DNA of 64,000 nucleotides from NCBI GenBank assembly GCA_000708835.1, contig DF236965.1, positions 186,001-250,000 of the forward strand. The letters run 5' to 3'. The translations under genes were made by a program, and so were the position numbers. The stretch is from Klebsormidium nitens (Eukaryota; Plantae; Klebsormidiophyceae). This document shows, in pieces, positions 19,723-30,563 of this stretch (position 1 is the first letter of the stretch; each line of letters begins with the position of its first letter). The notes beneath the pieces were generated by a model. That model saw only the letters and a list, made by a program, of their open reading frames with translations, was not told the origin of the DNA and searched no databases.

Positions 19723-22700
19723 ATGGCTTCGAAGGTGGGTATGTCGCAAAAGCCTGGCAGTTAGGACGTCAGGAATGTGACAGCTCTCATTGCTAGCATC
19801 ATCACAAAAACCTTGCACGAATTACATATGCAGGCAGCTTCGTTGTTGCTGACACTACTTGGTAGTTCACCTCGCTCACCCCTTCAAGCAAGCCAGATAT
19901 CTTGTCAGCAGCATGCAAATGCTGTGAACTCTCAAATCCTACATGTCAGATCTTCGAGGCTCGAGTGGATACTCTGCCAATGTAATCCAATCTTCAAACT
20001 TACTTATTGCGAAAGAGCTGTATAAGCAGCCGAATTGTGACGTATATGCAGGTGTTGACTGCCATGGCTCGGCACATGACCTCAGAAAGCAGCCACGCCA
20101 GCGAGGAAATTTCCAACTTCAGACAGGACCTGGACATACTCTTGCTAGCGAGCGGTCCAAATGGTGCAGGAATAGGCCTTCCGTTGCTGCCTGAAGAAAA
20201 GTTCTTCCCAATCTGGAGATGGTTGAACCAGGTGATTGGCAGTTTGAATCTAATCCTGATGGCTGCAAGCCTGGGGTGGTGGCGTTTGTGATTAGTTGGC
20301 TCAGCTGCTATCACTACTTAACATCACCGCGGCTGGAGGATTCAGACTTTCTGATTGGGATTATCTTCACCATTGATTCAACAGTTCAGAAGAGCGCCTT
20401 CTGTGTAGAGAGCATCTACACAGAGGAGCTCAAGGTGGTGTTGTGTTTGTACATCTTCTTGCGGTGGCTCTGGTGGTCCTGTGGCTTTTAAGTGAAACTG
20501 GTTTCAGTAACGGCTTCATGTCACCGATCCAGACCATGTATCATTATCTCAAAGGCAAACATTCCCACTGTGAACGTGATAATACGCCTAAGCAGGCACT
20601 GTCTTCAGTTCCAATACGAGACCCATTGCAAGGGGTAAAAGGTCTTCAGCCTGTTTTCTACATGGTGCCGCTGACTTGGTCTAGCTTCTTACAACGTGGG
20701 TTCCATATTCTTAGCCTCACAATCTCCATCGATTTCAGCCTGTTGATCTTGAAATTTTATTTTGATCCTGTCCTCTGTCCAATATGATGCAGGCTGAGCC
20801 CTCGACTGCATTCGCAACTGGACTCCTCAGCCGAGTGGCAGAGTTCGATGGACAGGCAGAAAATGGGGGCAGCCGACGAAACAGGGGCATGTCTGTTGCT
20901 GTCGGATCACCAGGAAAGCCCAAGCCCGGCACACGAGTAACTGGTGCAGAAGGGGAGGGGTCTCCTGGGGCAAGGAAGACAGCCCCTTCATCTGATCGTA
21001 TCCTCATAAGCTTTGCCTCCGAAACTTCTGTGATGTGCTTTGTTCCCTTCCCGGTTAGAATAAAGCAGGCCGGTTGGCTGTTCACCAGATATCAGACCGG
21101 ATTGAAGAGCTGTATTGGCAGAAAGCTGCTTTATGTCTCTACATATAATGATGTGTACTATGTTCTTCCTTGACATGCAACGTGCCAACTCTATCTGGAG
21201 GAGCGTCTTTCAACACCCCACGCATACTGCAACTTTCTCTGAAACTTGTTAAGTATCCTTCCAGACTTACGACTACCGTCCTGTGCTCGTTCAAAACGTA
21301 CAACGCCATATTGGCCTCCTTGACCACGTTCCCAGAGCCCCTCATCACACGCACCGCGGCCCTCAACACGGTTCTGCTGCTGGCGTTGCACCACCCGCTG
21401 GACACGACAGACGAGGCCCTTGCGGCGGTGCTCGGGAGCTTCATGCACGCCCTCAGCAAGTCGCTCGACTGGACAGACTTCGTGAGGCCCAGTTCTTTTG
21501 TCGAGCTTGTAGTGTGGTCCTGAGGAACTACTGTTGTTGTTGTAGGTTGGACTGCCCGATTGACTTTGAGCGTCACTGGACCGCCATTTCGATCGGTACA
21601 AGTCTGCCGATCTGATTTCGTCTCTCCATTAATTTCGAAGCCTTGGACTTTTGGAAAAGCCTGAGGACAAGTGCAAGCAGATTTTTGCCTTTCCTTGTCT
21701 CCATGAATCTAAAAATGCTAGTTTTACCGGATTTTTCGTCGAACCTGTCCGCACGGGATGGTCAAGAAACTGGCGAGACACCCGCGAGTCTCAGAATCTT
21801 TCGGTACTCGATTCGGCTGAACACACCGGGCAGGTTCCTGTGCTCTATCTACTGCGGAAGTACTGCCCGGTAGGTTGACCTGGCCAGATTCGTGCACCCA
21901 ACTCAAACCGGATTTTGTACAACCCCCAAATTTTCCACCCGTTCAAGGCGGACAGGTTTGACGAAAACTCCAGTATGCAAGACCGCTCATGCGAGGGATT
22001 TGCTCGTAACGTCTTAGGTCGTCTCGGCGGTGCGGCAAGGCCCCGAGGGCCGACTGAAGACGCTGGGGAACGCGGTCGGGCAGTGCGCCAATCTGCTGTG
22101 CAACAGCCTCCTGGGGGACGCTGCCATCGGTAACGGCCCTTTCTGTCTTTCTGTCTGCTTTCAGGGATGCCCTTGCAGAGAGTCGGAACTGTAAAGAGGG
22201 GCTGCGAGCAGCCGTCGTTCTAAGTGAAACCGCTGTTCCTGTGGTTCATTCTCGAGACTGAGATTTGGAGACGTAGGCTTGTAAAAGTTCCTCAAAACAC
22301 ACGCGGTCACGATTGGGCGACTTGCACTTTGTCCGAGCGCCCTGGATTGCTTTCGCACTGACCGTCTTCGTGACTACAAATAATCAAAAACTGGCATCGG
22401 GAAGTCACCGTCCACTTTCGTTGTCGAGCGGCCGTTCTCTTTCCACGTCATCAGGGAAAGTGACCGTTTCCGAAGCCCTCGAAATAAAATTGTCCGACTC
22501 CTCATGATCGAACTAGAAAATTGTTACAAAATTTCTTCGCCGACCGAGTCTCAACCTTTCAGCTCCTGCTTCTGATCACAACTCCTCACCGGATTTAGTT
22601 CCGTTCCGTCCGCTTGCCAGGCAGCGGCTTCATTTACACGTGGCTCCAGGGCCAGTCGCTCAAGCCCGGGCTGGCTCCGGCCATTCTGTCGGGCCTCATC

Positions 22701-25700
22701 ACCGAGACTCAGAACGTGGAACCGGGGCAAGGCCCCGACTGCCTCAACCAGGGGCTGTGCCTGCTGCACATGGTCCGCCAGTTCCTTTCCCTGGTGAGAC
22801 GTATTTTGTGGGTGACTTCGTCGTCTGTGTCCCTGAAGGTCCTCTCACAGATGCTGAGCAGGTGTTTGCGGCGCCAGAATGCTGCTGATTGTCTACGAAG
22901 GGTGGTTTTGTGCTTCAAGGGTCCGGAATGCTGCACTTCGTTGAGCATGCCTGATGATATGCAATCCAAATCATGCTCCGTAGTAATTATCGGCATTCTC
23001 ACTTGCCTTGGAACTGTCTCGTGCTGCAGAACGTGTACGATGACGATATGCTGACGCAGCTCTCGACAGCCGTGAGCTCGCTCTACTTCTGGCCCAACCC
23101 GGTCGGCAAATACGCTGCTGAGACGCTCCATCTCATTGCTCGGGAGCAAAGATCACCGGGTGAGCCGAAAGCCTGATTCACGGTAGCTACTTATGACGTA
23201 GTGCGTCATCATATCCAAAACCGGCGACCAGAAGGAAGCAATTCCTTTTTGCCGTTGACAGCCGTTTGATCTGAAATGGGTAGCGTCAACGGGGGGTTTT
23301 GGGCTAGATGAGAACGTGGGCGCTTGAAACTCGGGTCTGAGTCTCGACTTTCGTATCCCGAAAGTCTCGACTTTCGTGCCTGACCTGACGTAGCTGTGTT
23401 CGTCGTTTAGTGAGTTGTCAGTACCGTCGAGAGTCGCTCTCTTGCTTTTTAGAAAAAACGTTGGCCGAGCCCGAGCGCCTGGAGACCTTTGCTTCATTTC
23501 CGCCGTTCCGGCGCTTCATTCGCTTCCAGGCACCAGCTTGCGGCGCCGTCTCGCTGCTGACAACACGGCTTTGAGCACCCGCAAGGAGACTGACGAAGGG
23601 TCAACCCACCGGCGCAAGGTCACGGTGCTCCTCAACTCGACCTGCCCGCGGGCCTCGGTTGTTGCCAACCTGCTGCAATCGGAGCCCGGGGGTACGGGGG
23701 AGACGCCCCCGGAGCAAACGGCCGGGGTGCAGCTCCGACTGATCGTAGGTGAGCCAAACTCTTCGTTCCTTAGTAGACCCTTTAGAGTGTTTCGTTCCCC
23801 GGAGCAAAGATCAAGTAGATGGCCTGATTGAAATGCTTCGATTGAGAATGGCTGTAGCTATGTTGGTTTTCCGGAGGTGACCTGGATCGGCTAGGCAAAG
23901 CTTGACAGCTGGATGCTGAAGTAGCAAGGAAGCTTCGGATGTCCATCCATGATTTCAAGAACCAGCTCGGCTAATTATTCTCGGAAGCTCGCATCTATGG
24001 CTCCACTCCCGCGTCAAGAGAGATTAGCAAGATGCTCAAATCCAGTTTCGTATGTCCCCGGAAGCCAGGCTTTGCTGCGGACTGTGAAAGTCTAATCTCG
24101 TTCACCTTCGCATTGGGAAGTTCGGTGATCGTTGTTGTGGCCTTCAGACCTCATTTCAGATGCCTCCCTTCTCTGTTGATCCTTGTAATACAGATAGCGA
24201 CGTTGACCAATATTCCACTCTACTCTGTTCAGGAATGCTCCAGTCTGCGGGGATCGACGTGTTGAACTCAGCAGAAGGCCGGGCACGCGCGAGCTTGCTT
24301 GCGAATCTGCCCGTGGACATGATAGGCAATGCCTACGAGGCCTGCGTCAACACGGCATTTGAAGCGGAGATGATGTCGTGAGCTTTTCTCATAAAACGTC
24401 TCTTCAAAGTGCCGGCTCCACGAAAATGTGCGGTATGTATCTCACCTAACAATCGACGGAAGTGATCTTTCCAAGAAGTACGACAAAAGCCTGGCGAATT
24501 GAACTCGCGCAAAACTTGCAAAGTGGACGGCTACAAAGAAACTCGTGGTTCTCTTCAGCCTGACCCAAGAACGCTGCTTTGCGTCCGGAGCCTTCAGCAG
24601 CTGACTGGACTCTGTCAGCGCTGATCATGAGGGACAGCACTGTAGTACAAGTATGCCGCACGACCGAACTTGCTCCGGTTTAGAACGCTTTATAGAGGAC
24701 GCACACACTCGAAGCTCTTGTATCTGCACTTTTGTGATGCAAACGCTTTGAGACAACGGCCATAGAAGCAAGGCCGTAGGCAGATAGTAATTTCGGGACA
24801 CATCACAGAGACCAAGCGAAATAGAATGTACTATCGAAAGCAGGCCCCGCAAGTTCCTCACAGCAATTGCTCAAGGGAACTGTATCTTGACTGGTACGCC
24901 GTTTTTCACTGCAGCGACGTAAAACAGGCGGCTGCGCACCGGGCGTCGCACCTAGCTGACGTGTGGCGGCTACTTGGGGAGGACGTGGAGGCGCAGCGCA
25001 AGACTGGGGGAGGCGACCAACCGCCGGAGCAGCGGCTCAGCTGCCTTCCCATGCAGGTCGCCGCCCTGGTTGGGAAGGACCGCCCCCGAGAGCCCGTCAC
25101 TCTCGACCTCAACTCCTGCGCAAAGTAAGGGGAGCCAGTTCAGTAAACGCTTTTCAGGACTTACGGTGCTGAAACAAGAGCGAACGGGGTCTGATTAAAC
25201 GTGCGCTGGTCATAGTTTGAGATATTGACCGTTGCCCTTAGGAGACTGAGAGGTATTACGGCCCATGCGACGCCAGAGCCGCTGGAAGCCCTTGCCAGGT
25301 GGAATCACCGGACTGCCCCCGGTTCTGCAATCAACCAAGGCGTTCGTTCTGGAGTGGTGTTTGGGGCTTTTTCTGGCCTCTTCTACATGTTTCCGCTGTT
25401 CCGCGATGGAAACATTCAAATGTGACATGGAGAGGCAAGCTGGATTACCCCGTGCGTATGTGTGATTCGAGGCGGGAGGAAATGCAGGAAACCTTCAGGA
25501 TTTTAGGCTGACCCGGCGCATGTATCCGCAGGGCTCTTCCTCTCCAGTTCGAGGTGCTTTCCGCTGAGCCGCGGTGGCGTTCCGCTGTGACGGATGCCGT
25601 CGAGGACGAGGTGGGGTCGACCCCGGGGCCCATCATCCCGTGCTACGCCCACACCGGGGCGGAGGAGACGCTGCTCGACGTCATCAAGAAGTATGACGTG

Positions 25701-28700
25701 GCGCCCAAAGGGCGGGTGTACCAGAAGCAAAGGTGAGCTGCGCTATCATTCCGATCTCACAAAGTGCCTAGGGCACGTGGCGTGCTGTTCTGCTCTCTTC
25801 CTTAGATACCTCGTATTTGCTGTTCTGTAGTCGTCTTTACTGACAAAGGCTGCGGTTCCTAGACAAAATGCTCGGAAACTCTAGGAGGAACTGCCTATGA
25901 GCTCCGAACCCAATCCTCGAGATACGCTCCCAAATTCGCATCGCTGTCCGTAAGATTTTCGGAGCCTCATACCGCCGAATAAGTCCTTCGCTGAACCAGT
26001 CTCTACATGGTTTGGACTTGTTGATCATTCTCCTTCCGCTTTGAGTTTTCCGTTCGTTAGCAGAAAGCTAATTTTGTGGGCAGTCAAAGAAGTCTTTTTC
26101 AAAATCTCGCTTTTCACAGGCTAGAGCCCATCCGCATTGTCCTCGCGGGTGGCGACGGCAGCCTGCACTACGCAGTGGCTGCCTACGTGGGCCTGCTGTA
26201 CGCGAGCAGCGACGGGGGCACTGCCGCAGGGGGCACGTCCAGCAGCGAGATGCTGAACGCAGTCGGTAAGGCAATTTTGGGTAGGGTACTTAAGGCTTTG
26301 CATTTTCAGTGGCTTGGAACAGCTCGGTTGATCTGGACGCACGTGTTGATGCGCGAGTGCTATGACCAAAGTGCTGGATGAAGGGAAGCCCGCTGTCCTG
26401 GAGGATAAGTCTACAACCTGCGCTGAATTGGTAGATTCGCCTCCGCATATACTTGGTGGCGGCAGCAAGCTAACGATGGATACCCATAAGTCGGTGAAGT
26501 CTACGAAGCGCAGGTCTGACTTTGGGACGCATGTCGATTAGAGTCCAATAGACGATGACATGCGTTTCTGCTTGACTTGAAACGGCTCTTGACCTGCCCT
26601 GAATGAGCCGAAATCTTCGCAGAGTTGCGGTTCTACATCGTCCCGTGTGGCGAGAGCAACGTGCTGGCGTCGTACCTGGCTCAGGAGGACATTTGGTACG
26701 GTTCCGGATCGACGCTCTGTTAAGAAGCCGCTTGAGCCGGTCGTGGGTCCTCTTATTTTATGTAGCAGTCTTCACGGATCTAACATTGAGCGACGGTCAG
26801 CGCCCTTCTGACGTCACCGACTTTTGCGACTGGTTTCTCCTGAGAGCTTTCGTTGCCGCGGTCGAGCTTTGGAGAAAAAACAGATAAGCAAGCGTAGGAA
26901 ACTAGAATCACGAAGGCACCCGTAACCTTCTCGGTTCCTGTAAAGATGATTTCCGGATGGAGCTTTTCTCCACCATCTGAAACGGAAGATCACGTGCGTC
27001 TGGATACAAAAGATTTTTTTAATGCGCCGGCCGACTTATTCTCGTGGTCACTAGCTAGACGATGATTCCAGCGCAACCTGAATCTGCTGCCCACTCTGGC
27101 CCGTACCTTCGCCTTTAATCACTCTTCTCACACACGTCCGTTCTTTCACAGGTACTACGCCAACACGTACCTCCCCGTGCAGAGCCCCCTCCCCATCATC
27201 CCCCACGTGGGCCACATGACCCCCGGCTCCACAACCGCGCGCGCGCCTCTCGCGCTCAACCGCCCCAGCACCCTGCAGCCCCAAAAGTCCCAGCCCTCCG
27301 TGCCTCCATCCACGTCATCCGTCCACTCCTTTGCCAAGCGCTCCTCTCCCCCAGCCTCGTTTCTCCAGCAGCCAACGCCCGGGGGATCCCTTTCAGGGAG
27401 CCTATCCAGCTCCGGGTCCGGCATTTCTCCCCAACCGGGCGGCCCCGGCTCGCCCTTCCAGTCGAGGCCGACGTCAGTCGCCGCCTCGTTCTCCCCCGAA
27501 CGTTTCCAGGGGGCACGTGGCAGCTCGCCATTCGCCCCCATCGCGGCGTACCCTTCGCAGCAAAGCACCGCTCCGGGGGCGGTCCCTCCAGGAGCAGCAA
27601 CTCCCCGAAACGTGCAGACGGCGACCGCGGCAGTGAGCGGCAATGCAGAAGGTGTTAAGGCGCCGGCTGAGGAGGTCGCCGAAAGCGCGCCGGCGGCCAA
27701 GCAGCCGCTGCGGTTCAGCCAGAGGCTGCCGCTGACTCGGAAGACGAAGGCGCAGGGCCGGAAGTCGACAGTGAAAGGGGCGGACGGCAGCGCGACTGTG
27801 AGACCGCGTCATATGACTCCATAGCGCCCTCCCTTTCAAAAGCTGTTGGCACCGAATTTCATCAGAAAGCTCGAGTGGCTTCAAGGATTCGAAAGCTCTT
27901 TAAAGTTCTGTTGTCGTTTGGTGCGGCTGCAGCATGCGGCTGCAGCATGCGTAACGAGATTGAAAGCGGACCTAATCTTAGAGCGTGCTCGAGCTGTGGT
28001 AAAGCATGAAAATCAGAAGCGTTCTTCTTCCGCCTTCCCGAATTGCCACTGAAATCATCTTGCAAGACCGCCGAGTTTTACACGGTACAGGGTTGCTCAC
28101 CTTTCCCACTGCAGTGATTGTTGGCACTGAGCGGACATGTTTATTCCACAGGCCGAAACGCCGATTTTTCAATTCACTAGGCAAATAGAAAACCTGGTGC
28201 GAGAAGCGGAGGTGCCGGTGAGAGTCAGCATCTTCAACTGCGAGGGCTGGTTCAAAAACGGTGAGGCTTCTGGCGCTTGAACAAGTCCCTTGCTGCGAGA
28301 CAGGTGACCGATTCCAGGAGGCGAAGCGCGTATGGTGTTCCTTCGTGAAGCAAGCACTCTTTTTTTGGTCTGTGAATGCATCTCAATTCGCCTTCGTTGC
28401 TCGGCTCTAGATGGGCATAGAAGAAGGCTTCAATGGCGGGCAGGATTGCGCCCCGAATGTCATGAAATGTGCGACGAAATGCTGCCGCAGCCTCACCATA
28501 ACTCAAAACGGCGGTGCTTCTGTCTTATACGGACTGTGGAGCGAGCCTGTAAGTTCGGTTATCCACTGAGGTACTATCCTCCACCATAACGTCAACCGGC
28601 TATACACTTTATTTGGCTATAACGTCCACAAGCTTATGGTCATCCGTACTACGGGGTTTCGCGTGCAGGCAAGAAGAACCACCACTGCACGCTGCTGTTC

Positions 28701-30088
28701 TTCTCCCGGGCCGAGATCGGGCTGAGTGCAGTGGTGGCGACGCAGGGGGAAGACAAGCAGTCCGCCAGCAACTACCAGAGCGTGCCTCGGCGCGCGTCCG
28801 TCGGGCTGTCAAGCACGCAGGGCCAAGAAAGCCTGGAAACGCTCTCGAAGACGTTCAGGATGGGAGCCGAGATTACGCTGCAACAGGTAATCAAGCTCGT
28901 CTCGCCACTCTAGATAATTTGGATTTGTTGAAATGACTGTGCTATGTCGCAGACTTTCTGCTTGCTTTTGGATTGCGAAGAAGTGGGGAATCGGCACAGC
29001 GTCCAGTATTTGCCAACGGCGGGTCAGTTGGCTTCTTGACTGTAGTTATCCGTGATTCTGTCGATGAGCTACTGCGGTCCGCGTCAGGCCGCTTTTGTTC
29101 GCAACTCGGTTTCAGTTATCCTGGACATCCTTTCTTAAACGAAGAACGTAGTCAGAAGTATGGCGTGGGGCCATACGAACTGAGAGCTCTTTCGTTACTG
29201 CCCCCTCGTTACGATCGCTCTAGCGGCTGATGGTTACGACAGTGACCTAACAGAGCCAAATGGTTTTCTGGGCAACATAGAATGGTCAAAATGTTTTTGC
29301 CGCAGGTGACGCCATATGGGGAGGAGAGTGACGAAGTCGTCAAGATTGACAGCAAGGCGGTCTCTGCGATCGTGGCCGTCAACGTGCCGCGACCGGGCGA
29401 GCAGCGGCTGGGCGCTAACCCGTGCACTGACACGCTGGAGATGTGCCTCGTCGACGCCGATGCGGTGAGGCGACAGCTTGGTTTATTAGAAAAAGCAGCA
29501 TTTGACGAAGTTTGATTTGCCTCGGGAAGATTTGCGCTTGCACACGGCATGTAAAGTTGAGCCTCAGGAGAGGAAGAAGTGGCCATCGCTAAAGGGAGAT
29601 TCAAGGCATGCCACTCTTTGATTGAACGTGAAAATCGCAGGTATTAAGCAGGTTGTAAGGCTGACTAAATCAGAGTGGAGGCTCGTGTATGTTAAGATGC
29701 CCTTTCTGCGCGGAGAGGAAAACCATGGGAGAGCACAATCTGCACCGTCTTTTGACGCCTTCTTTTCTCAGCCGATCTGATCTCTGGCACCGTCCCGTCC
29801 AGCGTACCGTGATCCTATCGTGGCAAATTAAAAGAAAGCGTTGACATTTTGCAGCGGAGTCGCCGCCGTTTGCGGTCTATTGACGACCTACTGGACGGAG
29901 CGTCGTGCTATCACTCCAACAAACTGGTCGTTGAAGCGTCCGACTTCTCCAAGCCATTCCACGTGTTATTAGATGGAGAGGTGTACGGGCCGTTTTACAG
30001 GATCCGCATCACCCCATGCCGATCGCCCAAGAATCGAAGCGAGATTCTACGCTTTCCGGTCATGACGTACTTGCCCATTGTGCAATAG
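19723..30088 (+). CDS. Large multi-exon protein similar to PI3K class IB regulatory subunits p101/p84 (PIK3R5/PIK3R6 family); start codon tentative
   Basis: Phase-compatible exons from about 22020 to the stop at 30088 give, in order: DDDMLTQLSTAVSSLYFWPNPVGKYAAETLHLIAREQRSPG, RRKVTVLLNS, IRIVLAGGDGSLHYAVAAY, LRFYIVPCGESNVLASYLAQEDIWY, QIENLVREAEVPVRVSIFNCE, RAEIGLSA, EITLQQV and SKPFHVLLDGEVYGPFYRIRITPC...LRFPVMTYLPIVQ. These are colinear with recalled human p101 blocks. The exons before about 21300 (MASK|AASLLL...) are less certain. Confidence 0.75.
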
Positions 30089-30563
30089 ATAAACAGAGGT
30101 GCTGAAGGTAGGAGATTAGTTATCAACACAACATGCTTTTGCAGCTGGGATTAAAGCGTGACTATCTAAGTCACGTTGGAAAGAAAGATTGGGCAAACGA
30201 TCTCGAATACTACTTTAGATATTCGGGTTCCGGAAACAAGCCATTCGCATCTTTCGGATAAACTACAATAATGTGAGGACGGTAGGAAGTAGATGTATGA
30301 CTGAGAAGCACGCTGAGCGAGCGGTTTAGCTTCATTGAAACGAGGTGTTGCAGATTCAGATGATGAAGAACACAGATGACGTTGTTTAGCTTGTCCTGAC
30401 AGTGCCCTTTGGAACGAGGCGTGAAACCAACGGAAATATCGCGATAGACGTACATATGCTTCAACTTCAAAAAGATGCAAATGTAGTATCGCTTCTGCAT
30501 ATTCCCTTCCTTGATGTTTGCTGGGCAAAGAAAGCTCCATTAGTCCACTCGTGCAATAGACTG

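What the first reader, a model, noticed from the sequence alone, without database searches (positions are those of the whole stretch)
26120..26710. The p101-like protein keeps an intact GGDG lipid-kinase motif
Seen in sequence: IRIVLAGGDGSLHYAV, with GGDG at 26148-26159, sits where recalled vertebrate p101 has the degenerate LRIVVFGSDRI. Established: GGDG is the nucleotide-binding signature of the DAG kinase/sphingosine kinase fold, and the p101 alpha/beta plus beta-sandwich core was reported, as recalled, to resemble bacterial DgkB. Inference: this protein may be a catalytically or ATP-binding competent ancestor-like form, linking an enzyme to the pseudo-enzyme adaptor of animals.
Basis: partly seen in the sequence, partly recalled or inferred. 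Interest (0 to 1): 0.75.

Follow-up and report, generated by a model that had tools for sequence, protein, structure and literature searches.

The report
p101-like protein with kinase motifs intact
A green alga expresses a relative of the animal PI3K-gamma adaptor p101 that still carries the lipid-kinase active-site motifs p101 has lost, so the adaptor probably descends from a real enzyme that may still work here.

Summary
GGDG is encoded at 26148-26159, in an exon (26120-26265) whose two splice junctions are seen in RNA contigs from two studies.

The gene is colinear with a eukaryote-wide family. A profile of that family matches solved p101 (E 8e-24) and p84 (E 2e-17). It aligns GGDG with p101 GSDR and p84 GDDR.

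The window protein keeps the Asn of motif 1 and GGDG. It keeps P-x-G-x-x-N only partly, because the Ser/Thr position is Glu. It also keeps the Mg-binding DGE.

Across 28 family members, all 10 with GGDG[ST] also keep P-x-G-x-x-N and DGE. Members with a degraded GGDG mostly lose them. On a tree the intact state needs about 5 changes, but only 4 independent contrasts exist, so this is not significant.

Three ATP-contact positions of SphK1 (T54, E86, S112) are not canonical here, and no biochemistry exists. Competence is therefore plausible, not shown.

I found no paper on non-animal p101 relatives.

The parts
22997..23161 (+). N-terminal p101-like helical exon (the most conserved block shared with p101/p84). 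Exon borders not verified.
   Evidence: Family HMM positions 108-153, E 2.4e-11. tblastn hits from six homologues. The same profile block aligns to p101 residues 89-291.
23523..23684 (+). Exon piece carrying the motif-1-like strand VTVLLNSTC (LLNS at 23628-23639, Asn codon 23634-23636). Borders not verified.
   Evidence: Family HMM positions 151-197, E 5.7e-6. Aligns with Selaginella LLLNPQSA and p101 LLLNP.
25548..25732 (+). Exon with the strand that corresponds to motif 2 (LSAEPRW at 25557-25577, Ala where Selaginella and Cymbomonas have Thr).
   Evidence: The 3' junction 25732|26120 is seen in RNA contig X4-7. The acceptor at 25548 is inferred from the polypyrimidine tract and reading phase. 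Alignment.
26120..26265 (+). GGDG exon (motif 3). GGDG codons are 26148-26159, followed by S-L-H.
   Evidence: Both junctions are in RNA contigs. Family HMM E 3e-6.
26623..26695 (+). Exon with motif 4, P-C-G-E-S-N at 26643-26660, and the family D-x-W-Y block.
   Evidence: RNA joints 26265|26623 and 26695|27152. Family HMM E 6.5e-12. Aligns with YegS PLGTAND.
27152..27797 (+). Exon whose first ~25 codons are structured. The rest is a Ser/Pro-rich, probably disordered linker of about 190 residues. The donor may be 27798 or 27772.
   Evidence: RNA contigs cover 27151-27775. Translation. Homologues lack most of this insert.
28152..28260 (+). Exon that starts the beta-sandwich lobe (IENLVREA ... 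NCEGW). The acceptor may be 28131, 28135 or 28152.
   Evidence: tblastn hits from 10 homologues. Family HMM E 4.9e-10. The donor at 28261 is phase-consistent with the acceptor at 28669.
28669..28886 (+). Beta-sandwich exon (TLLFFSRAEIG ...).
   Evidence: RNA contigs cover 28676-28883 and show the joint 28886|29306. Family HMM E 1.5e-8.
29306..29464 (+). Beta-sandwich exon.
   Evidence: RNA joints on both sides, in three runs. Family HMM E 7e-13.
29855..30088 (+). Last coding exon, with motif 5 DGE at 29972-29980 (HVLLDGEVYGPF at 29960-29995) and the stop codon.
   Evidence: RNA joint 29464|29855.. 92% identical in a related alga (P0001). Register matches YegS LDGEP...IEILP (weak).

Best explanation
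The window encodes an expressed, full-length member of an old eukaryotic protein family that also contains the vertebrate PI3K-gamma adaptors p101 and p84. The protein has an N-terminal helical solenoid followed by a two-lobe module with the DAG-kinase/sphingosine-kinase fold (an alpha/beta lobe plus a beta-sandwich lobe). A long disordered Ser/Pro-rich loop interrupts the module.

Unlike p101 and p84, this protein keeps the core catalytic residues of that fold at the cleft between the lobes:
- the Asn of motif 1;
- GGDG, whose Asp is the proposed general base in SphK1;
- the Gly and Asn of P-x-G-x-x-N;
- the Mg-binding Asp and Glu of DGE.

The most likely reading is that it still binds Mg-nucleotide and phosphorylates a hydroxyl group of a lipid-like substrate that is not yet known. 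It would then represent the enzyme state from which the dead adaptors arose by repeated loss of these residues. It may in addition act as a scaffold.

Shown: homology, fold, motif retention, expression and splicing. Inferred: nucleotide binding, catalysis, the substrate class and the direction of evolution.
For: Expression and exon structure come from RNA joints.

Membership of the family:
- Window pieces match the family HMM colinearly. The assembled C-terminal module scores 358 bits, E 1.9e-108.
- The family profile hits p101 (7mez_B) at E 8e-24 and p84 (8aj8_B) at E 2.4e-17, in N-terminal, middle and C-terminal stretches.

Fold:
- The AlphaFold model of the Selaginella homologue has p84 and p101 as its top Foldseek hits (E 1e-19 to 1e-17), followed by SphK1, AGK, DAG kinases, YegS and DgkB.

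Sequence links to active kinases:
- Pfam DAGK_cat passes its cut-off in P0023 (27.2 bits against 23.6). It is near the cut-off (19.5-23.3 bits) in the six other GGDG-intact members that gave a hit, and gave no hit in Adiantum P0002 or P0003.
- hhalign of the intact subset against YegS aligns GGDGT and PLGTAND (E 1.4e-5, probability 80%).

Motif pattern across the family:
- All 10 GGDG[ST] members keep P-x-G-x-x-N and DGE. Of the 18 others, 14 lack the Glu of DGE and 12 lack motif 4.
- The positions invariant in the intact group but relaxed in the rest (kept by at most about 60%) are the G, D and G of GGDG, the G and N of motif 4, one Ala seven residues after that Asn, and the E of DGE. One Thr is near-invariant in the intact group.
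- The intact state needs 5 changes on the tree.

Literature: D81, D341 and E343 are essential in SphK1 (PMC4466670; PMC10243590).
Against: - There is no biochemical evidence.
- The structures are models of homologues that are 41-48% identical to the window protein, not of the window protein itself.
- Coordinates could not be inspected, so the state of the pocket is unknown.
- The equivalents of three SphK1 ATP-contact residues are not canonical. T54 is Ala in the window (Thr in Selaginella and Cymbomonas). E86 is Tyr and varies across the family. S112 is Glu and also varies.
- Motif 1 lacks the Pro and Gly of N-P-x-x-G.
- Single window exons give no Pfam hit.
- The co-loss of motifs rests on only 4 phylogenetically independent contrasts. 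The sign test gives p about 0.25, so the naive Fisher p of 1.5e-4 overstates it.
- Human p101 also keeps LLLNP, so some motifs can survive for structural reasons.
- Selaginella has both a class I PI3K (PMC4617754) and a motif-intact p101-like protein, so an adaptor role is not excluded.
Confidence: 0.55

Rival explanations
1. The protein is a non-catalytic scaffold or adaptor, as p101 and p84 are, perhaps for a class I/II PI3K. The kinase motifs persist because they hold the interlobe loops in shape, or because the protein binds nucleotide as a regulatory ligand without transferring phosphate.
For: - Whole-length homology and shared fold with p101 and p84.
- Non-canonical residues at the positions of SphK1 T54, E86 and S112.
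- p101 itself retains LLLNP.
- Selaginella is reported to have a class I PI3K catalytic subunit (PMC4617754) as well as this family.
- A Thecamonas member is fused to a Ras-type GTPase, which points to a signalling-scaffold role.
Against: - p101 and p84 keep the fold without GGDG or DGE, so the fold does not require these residues.
- The residues that set the intact group apart from the degraded group are almost all catalytic-motif residues, not general structural ones.
- The motifs are lost together in several lineages.
- The module model resembles active SphK1 more closely than p101.
Confidence: 0.33
2. The protein is an ordinary DAG, sphingosine or ceramide kinase paralogue, and the p101 likeness is superficial.
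For: - DAGK_cat Pfam hits in homologues.
- SphK1 is the top structural match for the module.
- Language-model features are nearest to DAGK clusters (a lead only).
Against: - The family profile finds only p101 and p84 in the PDB at significant E-values. No DAG or sphingosine kinase appears at E up to 1.
- PF10486 passes its cut-off in five homologues.
- The N-terminal solenoid exon in the window matches the p101-type block at E 2.4e-11.
- The full-length model has p84 and p101 as top hits.
Confidence: 0.03
3. The gene is decaying or non-functional, and GGDG is a leftover.
For: - An RNA contig lies unspliced inside one intron (28412-28637).
- Two family-conserved residues differ in the window protein: Tyr to Leu in I-E-N-Y, and Pro to Leu in T-I-P-F.
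Against: - The reading frame stays open across eight spliced exons.
- Splicing is seen in three studies.
- The last exon is 92% identical at protein level, against 81% at DNA level, in a related alga.
- All the core motif residues named above are intact.
Confidence: 0.04

Closest known systems
Vertebrate PI3K-gamma regulatory subunits p101 (PIK3R5) and p84/p87 (PIK3R6), Pfam PF10486; structures 7MEZ, 8SO9, 8AJ8
   Same: - Homologous over the whole length (family profile E 8e-24 and 2e-17).
- Same order of parts: helical solenoid, alpha/beta lobe, disordered inserts, beta-sandwich lobe.
- They are the top Foldseek hits of the full-length model.
- The D-x-W-Y block and LLN strand are shared.
   Different: - p101 has GSDR and p84 has GDDR where this protein has GGDG.
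- In the alignment neither shows the P-x-G-x-x-N motif. p101 has a long insert at that place and keeps only S-T-N-D after it.
- The p101 alignment ends at the Asp that corresponds to DGE, so the rest of that motif was not compared here. The p101 structure paper states that the catalytic residues are not conserved.
[quoted passage not shown]
- Binding to p110-gamma and G-beta-gamma is unknown here.
- The family was thought to have arisen in vertebrates (PMC4617754).
Sphingosine kinase 1 and the DAGK_cat superfamily (DgkB, YegS, AGK, CERK; Pfam PF00781)
   Same: - GGDG with the catalytic Asp.
- The G and N of motif 4.
- DGE, which coordinates Mg in DgkB and SphK1.
- The Asn of motif 1.
   Different: - A large p101-type N-terminal solenoid.
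- The first strand-helix unit is separated from the rest of the module by about 130 residues in the Selaginella protein.
- A disordered insert of about 190 residues.
- The Thr/Ser of motif 4 and the Glu after GGDG-x-x-x are not conserved.
- Sequence similarity is limited to motifs 3 and 4 (hhalign E 1.4e-5). Pfam is near threshold.
PACS-1/PACS-2 sorting proteins (Pfam PF10254)
   Same: Motif-degraded family members hit the Pacs-1 model over the same middle region that hits DAGK_cat in others (P0034 at 8.7e-9, P0021 at 4e-6).
   Different: No Pacs-1 hit was seen for the motif-intact plant-lineage members. No PACS structure or sequence was compared here, so this is only a lead.

Membership tests
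p101/p84 (PIK3R5/PIK3R6, PF10486) | Significant sequence homology to p101 and p84 along the whole protein | tested here: met
   A profile of 31 family members hits 7mez_B at E 8e-24 and 8aj8_B at E 2.4e-17, in three colinear stretches. Window pieces match the same profile colinearly, and the module scores E 1.9e-108.
p101/p84 (PIK3R5/PIK3R6, PF10486) | Pfam PF10486 above its gathering score | tested here: inconclusive
   The cut-off is passed by homologues P0021 (41.8 bits), P0023 (40.0), P0029 (32.8), P0020 (31.9) and P0053 (28.5), against a threshold of 23. Single window exons give no hit. The spliced window protein could not be submitted by reference.
p101/p84 (PIK3R5/PIK3R6, PF10486) | Architecture of helical solenoid, alpha/beta lobe and beta-sandwich lobe | tested here: met
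   The AlphaFold model of Selaginella P0004 (pTM 0.68) has p84 and p101 chains as its top eight Foldseek hits. This was tested on a homologue, not on the window protein.
p101/p84 (PIK3R5/PIK3R6, PF10486) | Binds p110-gamma and G-beta-gamma and has no catalytic residues (adaptor pseudoenzyme) | tested here: not met
   The 'no catalytic residues' part fails, because GGDG, the G and N of motif 4 and DGE are present. Partner binding cannot be tested with these tools.
DAGK/SphK catalytic superfamily (PF00781) | Two-lobe DAGK/SphK/NADK fold | tested here: met
   [not shown]
DAGK/SphK catalytic superfamily (PF00781) | GGDG motif with the catalytic Asp, in register | tested here: met
   GGDG at 26148-26159. 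hhalign places it on YegS GGGDGT.
DAGK/SphK catalytic superfamily (PF00781) | Motif 5, D-G-E (Mg-binding Asp and Glu) | tested here: met
   DGE at 29972-29980. The Asp is invariant in the 31-sequence family alignment. The Glu is present in all motif-intact members. The register with YegS LDGEP is supported only weakly (E 0.021) and by the range of the structural alignment.
DAGK/SphK catalytic superfamily (PF00781) | Motifs 1, 2 and 4 complete (N-P-x-x-G; Thr; G-[ST]-G-N) | tested here: inconclusive
   The window has LLNSTC (Asn only), Ala at the Thr position, and P-C-G-E-S-N (G and N only). YegS, an active enzyme, also lacks the Pro of motif 1 (sequence read).
DAGK/SphK catalytic superfamily (PF00781) | Pfam DAGK_cat above its gathering score | tested here: inconclusive
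   P0023 scores 27.2 against 23.6. P0012 scores 23.3, P0066 21.6, P0029 21.1, P0006 21.0, P0081 20.8 and P0004 19.5. P0002 and P0003 gave no hit. The window exon alone gives no hit.
DAGK/SphK catalytic superfamily (PF00781) | ATP-dependent lipid kinase activity | not testable with these tools
   Needs protein expression and assays.

The most novel reading that the evidence does not exclude
p101 and p84, and possibly the PACS proteins, are dead descendants of a so far undescribed lipid kinase class that dates to early eukaryotes. Living, catalytically active members survive in streptophyte algae, lycophytes, ferns, prasinophytes, CRuMs and Cryptista. The enzyme has died independently several times, notably in lineages where the protein serves class I PI3K signalling. 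The alga's protein would then be a new kind of lipid kinase with an unknown substrate, and a direct handle on how an enzyme became the G-beta-gamma-sensing adaptor of PI3K-gamma.
Probability: 0.4. Interest if true: 0.85.

Novelty: new variant of a known kind. Interest (0 to 1): 0.7.

Why it matters
p101 and p84 are drug-relevant regulators of PI3K-gamma. Their origin has been a puzzle. The one dedicated phylogeny dated them to vertebrates and asked how class IB PI3K is regulated elsewhere (PMC4617754). The structure paper noted a lipid-kinase-like fold without catalytic residues (PMC8397274).

This gene and its relatives show that the family is spread across eukaryotes and that a subset keeps the catalytic motif set as a block. 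That makes a concrete question testable: was the adaptor once a lipid kinase, and is it still one in plants and algae?

It also points to a possible unrecognised lipid kinase in the streptophyte lineage. And it offers a natural series of intact, half-degraded and dead forms for studying how pseudoenzymes arise.

Tried and rejected
- Pfam on single window exons found nothing useful. The exons are too short.
- PDB phmmer with single exons found nothing.
- The word-index protein search gave little. The last exon found only a 72-aa fragment from a related alga. Full-length Selaginella P0004 found only itself, because low-complexity words swamped the candidates. P0004 residues 430-853 added one protein.
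- L001, the contig behind the 72-aa fragment, is unspliced genomic DNA from a relative. It holds only the last two exons, so it gave no spliced reference.
- My first exon model skipped an exon. tblastn with homologues revealed the exon at about 28152-28260, and the model was corrected.
- A candidate exon at 28411-28548, suggested by an RNA contig, was rejected. It is out of phase with the next exon and matches no homologue.
- The profile of motif-intact members against the PDB gave only weak p101 hits (E 0.01) and a non-significant AGK hit (E 2.1). Sequence evidence for DAGK kinship therefore rests on Pfam and hhalign.
- The DgkB structure paper (PMC2847398) is not held. The roles of catalytic residues are taken from SphK1 papers instead.
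- The spliced window protein was never folded or scanned as a whole, because it has no reference and long sequences may not be typed.
Full report
**1. What is in the sequence**

The window is intron-rich eukaryotic DNA. Notes from other agents call the genome Klebsormidium nitens. I did not verify the species. In my tree the window protein sits next to fern and lycophyte sequences, with Chlorokybus close by but poorly supported (88/68), which fits a streptophyte.

I laid contigs of four public runs from three studies on 24300-30250. They show GT..AG joints at:
- 25732|26120
- 26265|26623
- 26695|27152
- 28886|29306
- 29464|29855

The gene is therefore transcribed and spliced, and both borders of the GGDG exon (26120-26265) have RNA support.

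The tetrapeptide by itself proves little. It occurs five times in the six-frame translation against 0.84 expected, and the other four copies lie in Gly-rich text. The case rests on homology.

**2. Gene model**

Single exons gave no Pfam or PDB hit. A full HMMER scan of 1.84 billion representative proteins with the last exon gave 60 hits. Many are 750-1000 residues long and match at their extreme C-terminus.

tblastn of these proteins onto the window revealed an exon I had missed (about 28152-28260) and an N-terminal exon at about 22997-23161.

An HMM of the family maps colinearly onto ten + strand pieces between 21347 and 30079. Two of them (21347-21454 and 27150-27362) are only marginal, with E of 0.003 and 0.015.

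| Piece | E-value |
|---|---|
| 22997-23161 | 2.4e-11 |
| 23523-23684 | 5.7e-6 |
| GGDG exon | 3e-6 |
| 26622-26702 | 6.5e-12 |
| 28158-28262 | 4.9e-10 |
| 28665-28883 | 1.5e-8 |
| 29285-29473 | 7e-13 |

The assembled C-terminal module scores 358 bits. The borders upstream of 25548, the donor at 27798 versus 27772, and the acceptor at 28152 versus 28131 or 28135 remain unverified. All of the donor and acceptor alternatives lie in a disordered Ser/Pro-rich linker.

**3. It is a p101/p84 relative**

- Pfam PF10486 passes its threshold in five homologues.
- A profile of 31 family members hits solved p101 (7mez_B E 8e-24, 8so9_B E 9e-24) and p84 (8aj8_B E 2.4e-17) in N-terminal, middle and C-terminal stretches.
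- That alignment places p101 'VVVFGSDRIS' and p84 'VLVLGDDRML' on the family's 'vGGDGTlH'.
- An AlphaFold model of the Selaginella homologue (853 aa, pLDDT 69.7, pTM 0.68, core above 85) has p84 and p101 chains as its top eight Foldseek hits (E 1e-19 to 9e-17). SphK1, AGK, Bacillus DAG kinases, YegS and DgkB follow.

**4. The kinase-like module**

The Adiantum homologue P0002 (431 aa, about 41% identical to the window module) is annotated without the N-terminal solenoid, so it served as a module-only model (pLDDT 81, pTM 0.84).

|---|---|
| SphK1 | 20.7 (268 residues, 3.4 A) |
| p84 | 18.6 |
| DgkB | 17.8 |
| YegS | 17.6 |
| AGK | 16.0 |
| p101 | 13.5-14 |
| NAD kinases | 12-13 |

The plant-lineage module looks at least as much like active lipid kinases as like the dead adaptors.

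- Pfam DAGK_cat passes its cut-off in P0023 (27.2 against 23.6). It is just below in the six other motif-intact members that gave a hit, and absent in P0002 and P0003.
- hhalign of the intact subset against E. coli YegS (taken from NC_000913.3) aligns GGDGT and PLGTAND at E 1.4e-5, probability 80% (the whole family gives E 4.7e-4).
- A restricted C-terminal comparison puts LDGE-x-x-G...I-x-I-x-P in register with YegS LDGEPLSG...IEILP, though weakly (E 0.021).

**5. The other active-site residues**

SphK1 work defines five ATP-pocket motifs. It shows that D81 (in SGDG), D341 and E343 (DGE, Mg-binding) are essential, and that N22, T54, E86, S112, R185 and R191 contribute (PMC4466670; D81 as general base in PMC10243590).

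| Motif | Window protein | Coordinates |
|---|---|---|
| 1 | LLNS (Asn kept, Pro and Gly absent) | 23628-23639 |
| 2 | LSAEPRW (Ala where Selaginella and Cymbomonas have H-T-E) | 25557-25577 |
| 3 | GGDGSLH-Y (Asp kept; the position of SphK1 E86 is Tyr) | GGDG at 26148-26159 |
| 4 | P-C-G-E-S-N (G and N kept; the Ser/Thr position is Glu) | 26643-26660 |
| 5 | DGE | 29972-29980 |

The catalytic and metal-binding core is intact, but three peripheral ATP contacts are not canonical. I could not inspect coordinates, so the geometry of the pocket is untested.

**6. Survey of homologues**

Named members are:
- Selaginella, Adiantum, Cymbomonas and Chlorokybus (Viridiplantae)
- Cavenderia, Clastostelium, Rhizamoeba and Soliformovum (Amoebozoa)
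- Thecamonas (Apusozoa)
- Rigifila (CRuMs)
- Palpitomonas (Cryptista)

The rest are environmental sequences.

GGDG[ST] is intact in 10 of 28 rows: the window, Selaginella, Adiantum, P0003, Cymbomonas, P0012, P0066, P0023, Rigifila and Palpitomonas. All ten also have P-x-G-x-x-N and DGE. Where the N-terminus aligns (Selaginella, P0023, Rigifila, P0066 and the window), they have the motif-1 Asn.

Of the other 18 rows, 14 lack the Glu of DGE and 12 lack motif 4. Where the N-terminus is present, the Asn is replaced in most of them, usually by Asp.

The columns invariant in the intact group and relaxed in the rest are the second G, the D and the last G of GGDG, the G and N of motif 4, one Ala seven residues after that Asn, and the E of DGE. 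One Thr is near-invariant in the intact group. Other conserved columns are conserved in both groups.

On a maximum-likelihood tree the intact state needs 5 changes, and starred branches force at least 4. It is therefore not a single clade.

A caution is needed here. Only 4 phylogenetically independent contrasts exist. DGE goes the same way in 3.2 of them on average and never the opposite way, but the sign test gives p of about 0.25. The naive Fisher p of 1.5e-4 ignores relatedness. The tree is unrooted, so 'ancestral' is a parsimony inference drawn from the scatter of the intact state.

**7. Interpretation**

The best reading, at about 0.55, is a p101-family protein that keeps a working or at least nucleotide-binding DAGK/SphK-type site. 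That is the enzyme state of a family whose vertebrate members are dead adaptors.

The main rival, at about 0.33, is a scaffold in which the motifs persist for structure or for ligand sensing. Three points favour it: the non-canonical peripheral contacts, the survival of LLLNP in p101, and the fact that Selaginella, the one archaeplastid reported to have a class I PI3K (PMC4617754), also has a motif-intact member.

'Ordinary DAG kinase' and 'decaying gene' are poorly supported.

**8. Novelty**

The only phylogeny of class IB regulators that I found dated p101 and p87 to vertebrates (PMC4617754). Full-text searches for p101-like or PF10486 proteins outside animals, and for links between p101, PACS and DAG kinase, returned nothing relevant.

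The DAGK-like fold of p101 is published. Motif-intact relatives appear not to be. I rate this a new variant of a known kind.

The first-stage note s1-339121 on this same window already called the gene p101/p84-like.

Noticed in passing
window 28412-28637: An RNA contig (run X2) lies unspliced inside the intron 28261-28668 of the p101-like gene. It starts right after a TAG|A acceptor-like site. It could be a retained intron, an unspliced precursor or a separate transcript. It is out of phase with the coding exons and matches no homologue.
   Followed up: partly
P0053 (Thecamonas trahens XP_013757761.1), residues 10-171: This motif-degraded family member carries an N-terminal Ras-family GTPase domain (PF00071, E 3.5e-50) fused to the p101-like body. 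It is a natural fusion linking this family to Ras-type signalling.
   Followed up: no
P0034 res 555-740, P0021 res 417-595, P0020 res 647-717: Pfam Pacs-1 (PF10254) hits the DAGK-like middle region of motif-degraded members (E 8.7e-9, 4e-6, 7.5e-5). This suggests that PACS sorting proteins are another non-catalytic branch of the same fold.
   Followed up: no
window 27230-27797: A Ser/Pro/Gly-rich insert of about 190 residues, probably disordered, follows motif 4. It is far longer than in the fern, lycophyte or algal homologues, where the equivalent linker is about 25-30 residues.
   Followed up: partly
L001 (Logan contig of SRR14092358), 462-631 and 1273-1502: This is genomic DNA of a related alga, with the last two exons at 81% DNA identity. 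The last exon is 92% identical at protein level, including HVLLDGEVYGPF. The introns have diverged.
   Followed up: partly
P0004 / P0061 (Selaginella moellendorffii LOC112346426 and LOC112345721): Two loci, 99% identical, encode the Selaginella member. They are probably the two haplotypes of that assembly. Selaginella is also the only archaeplastid reported to have a class I PI3K catalytic subunit (PMC4617754).
   Followed up: no
window 57031, 37905 (+) and 62213, 44222 (-): Four further GGDG tetrapeptides occur in the six-frame translation. All lie in Gly-rich low-complexity text without the strand-GGDG-helix context.
   Followed up: yes
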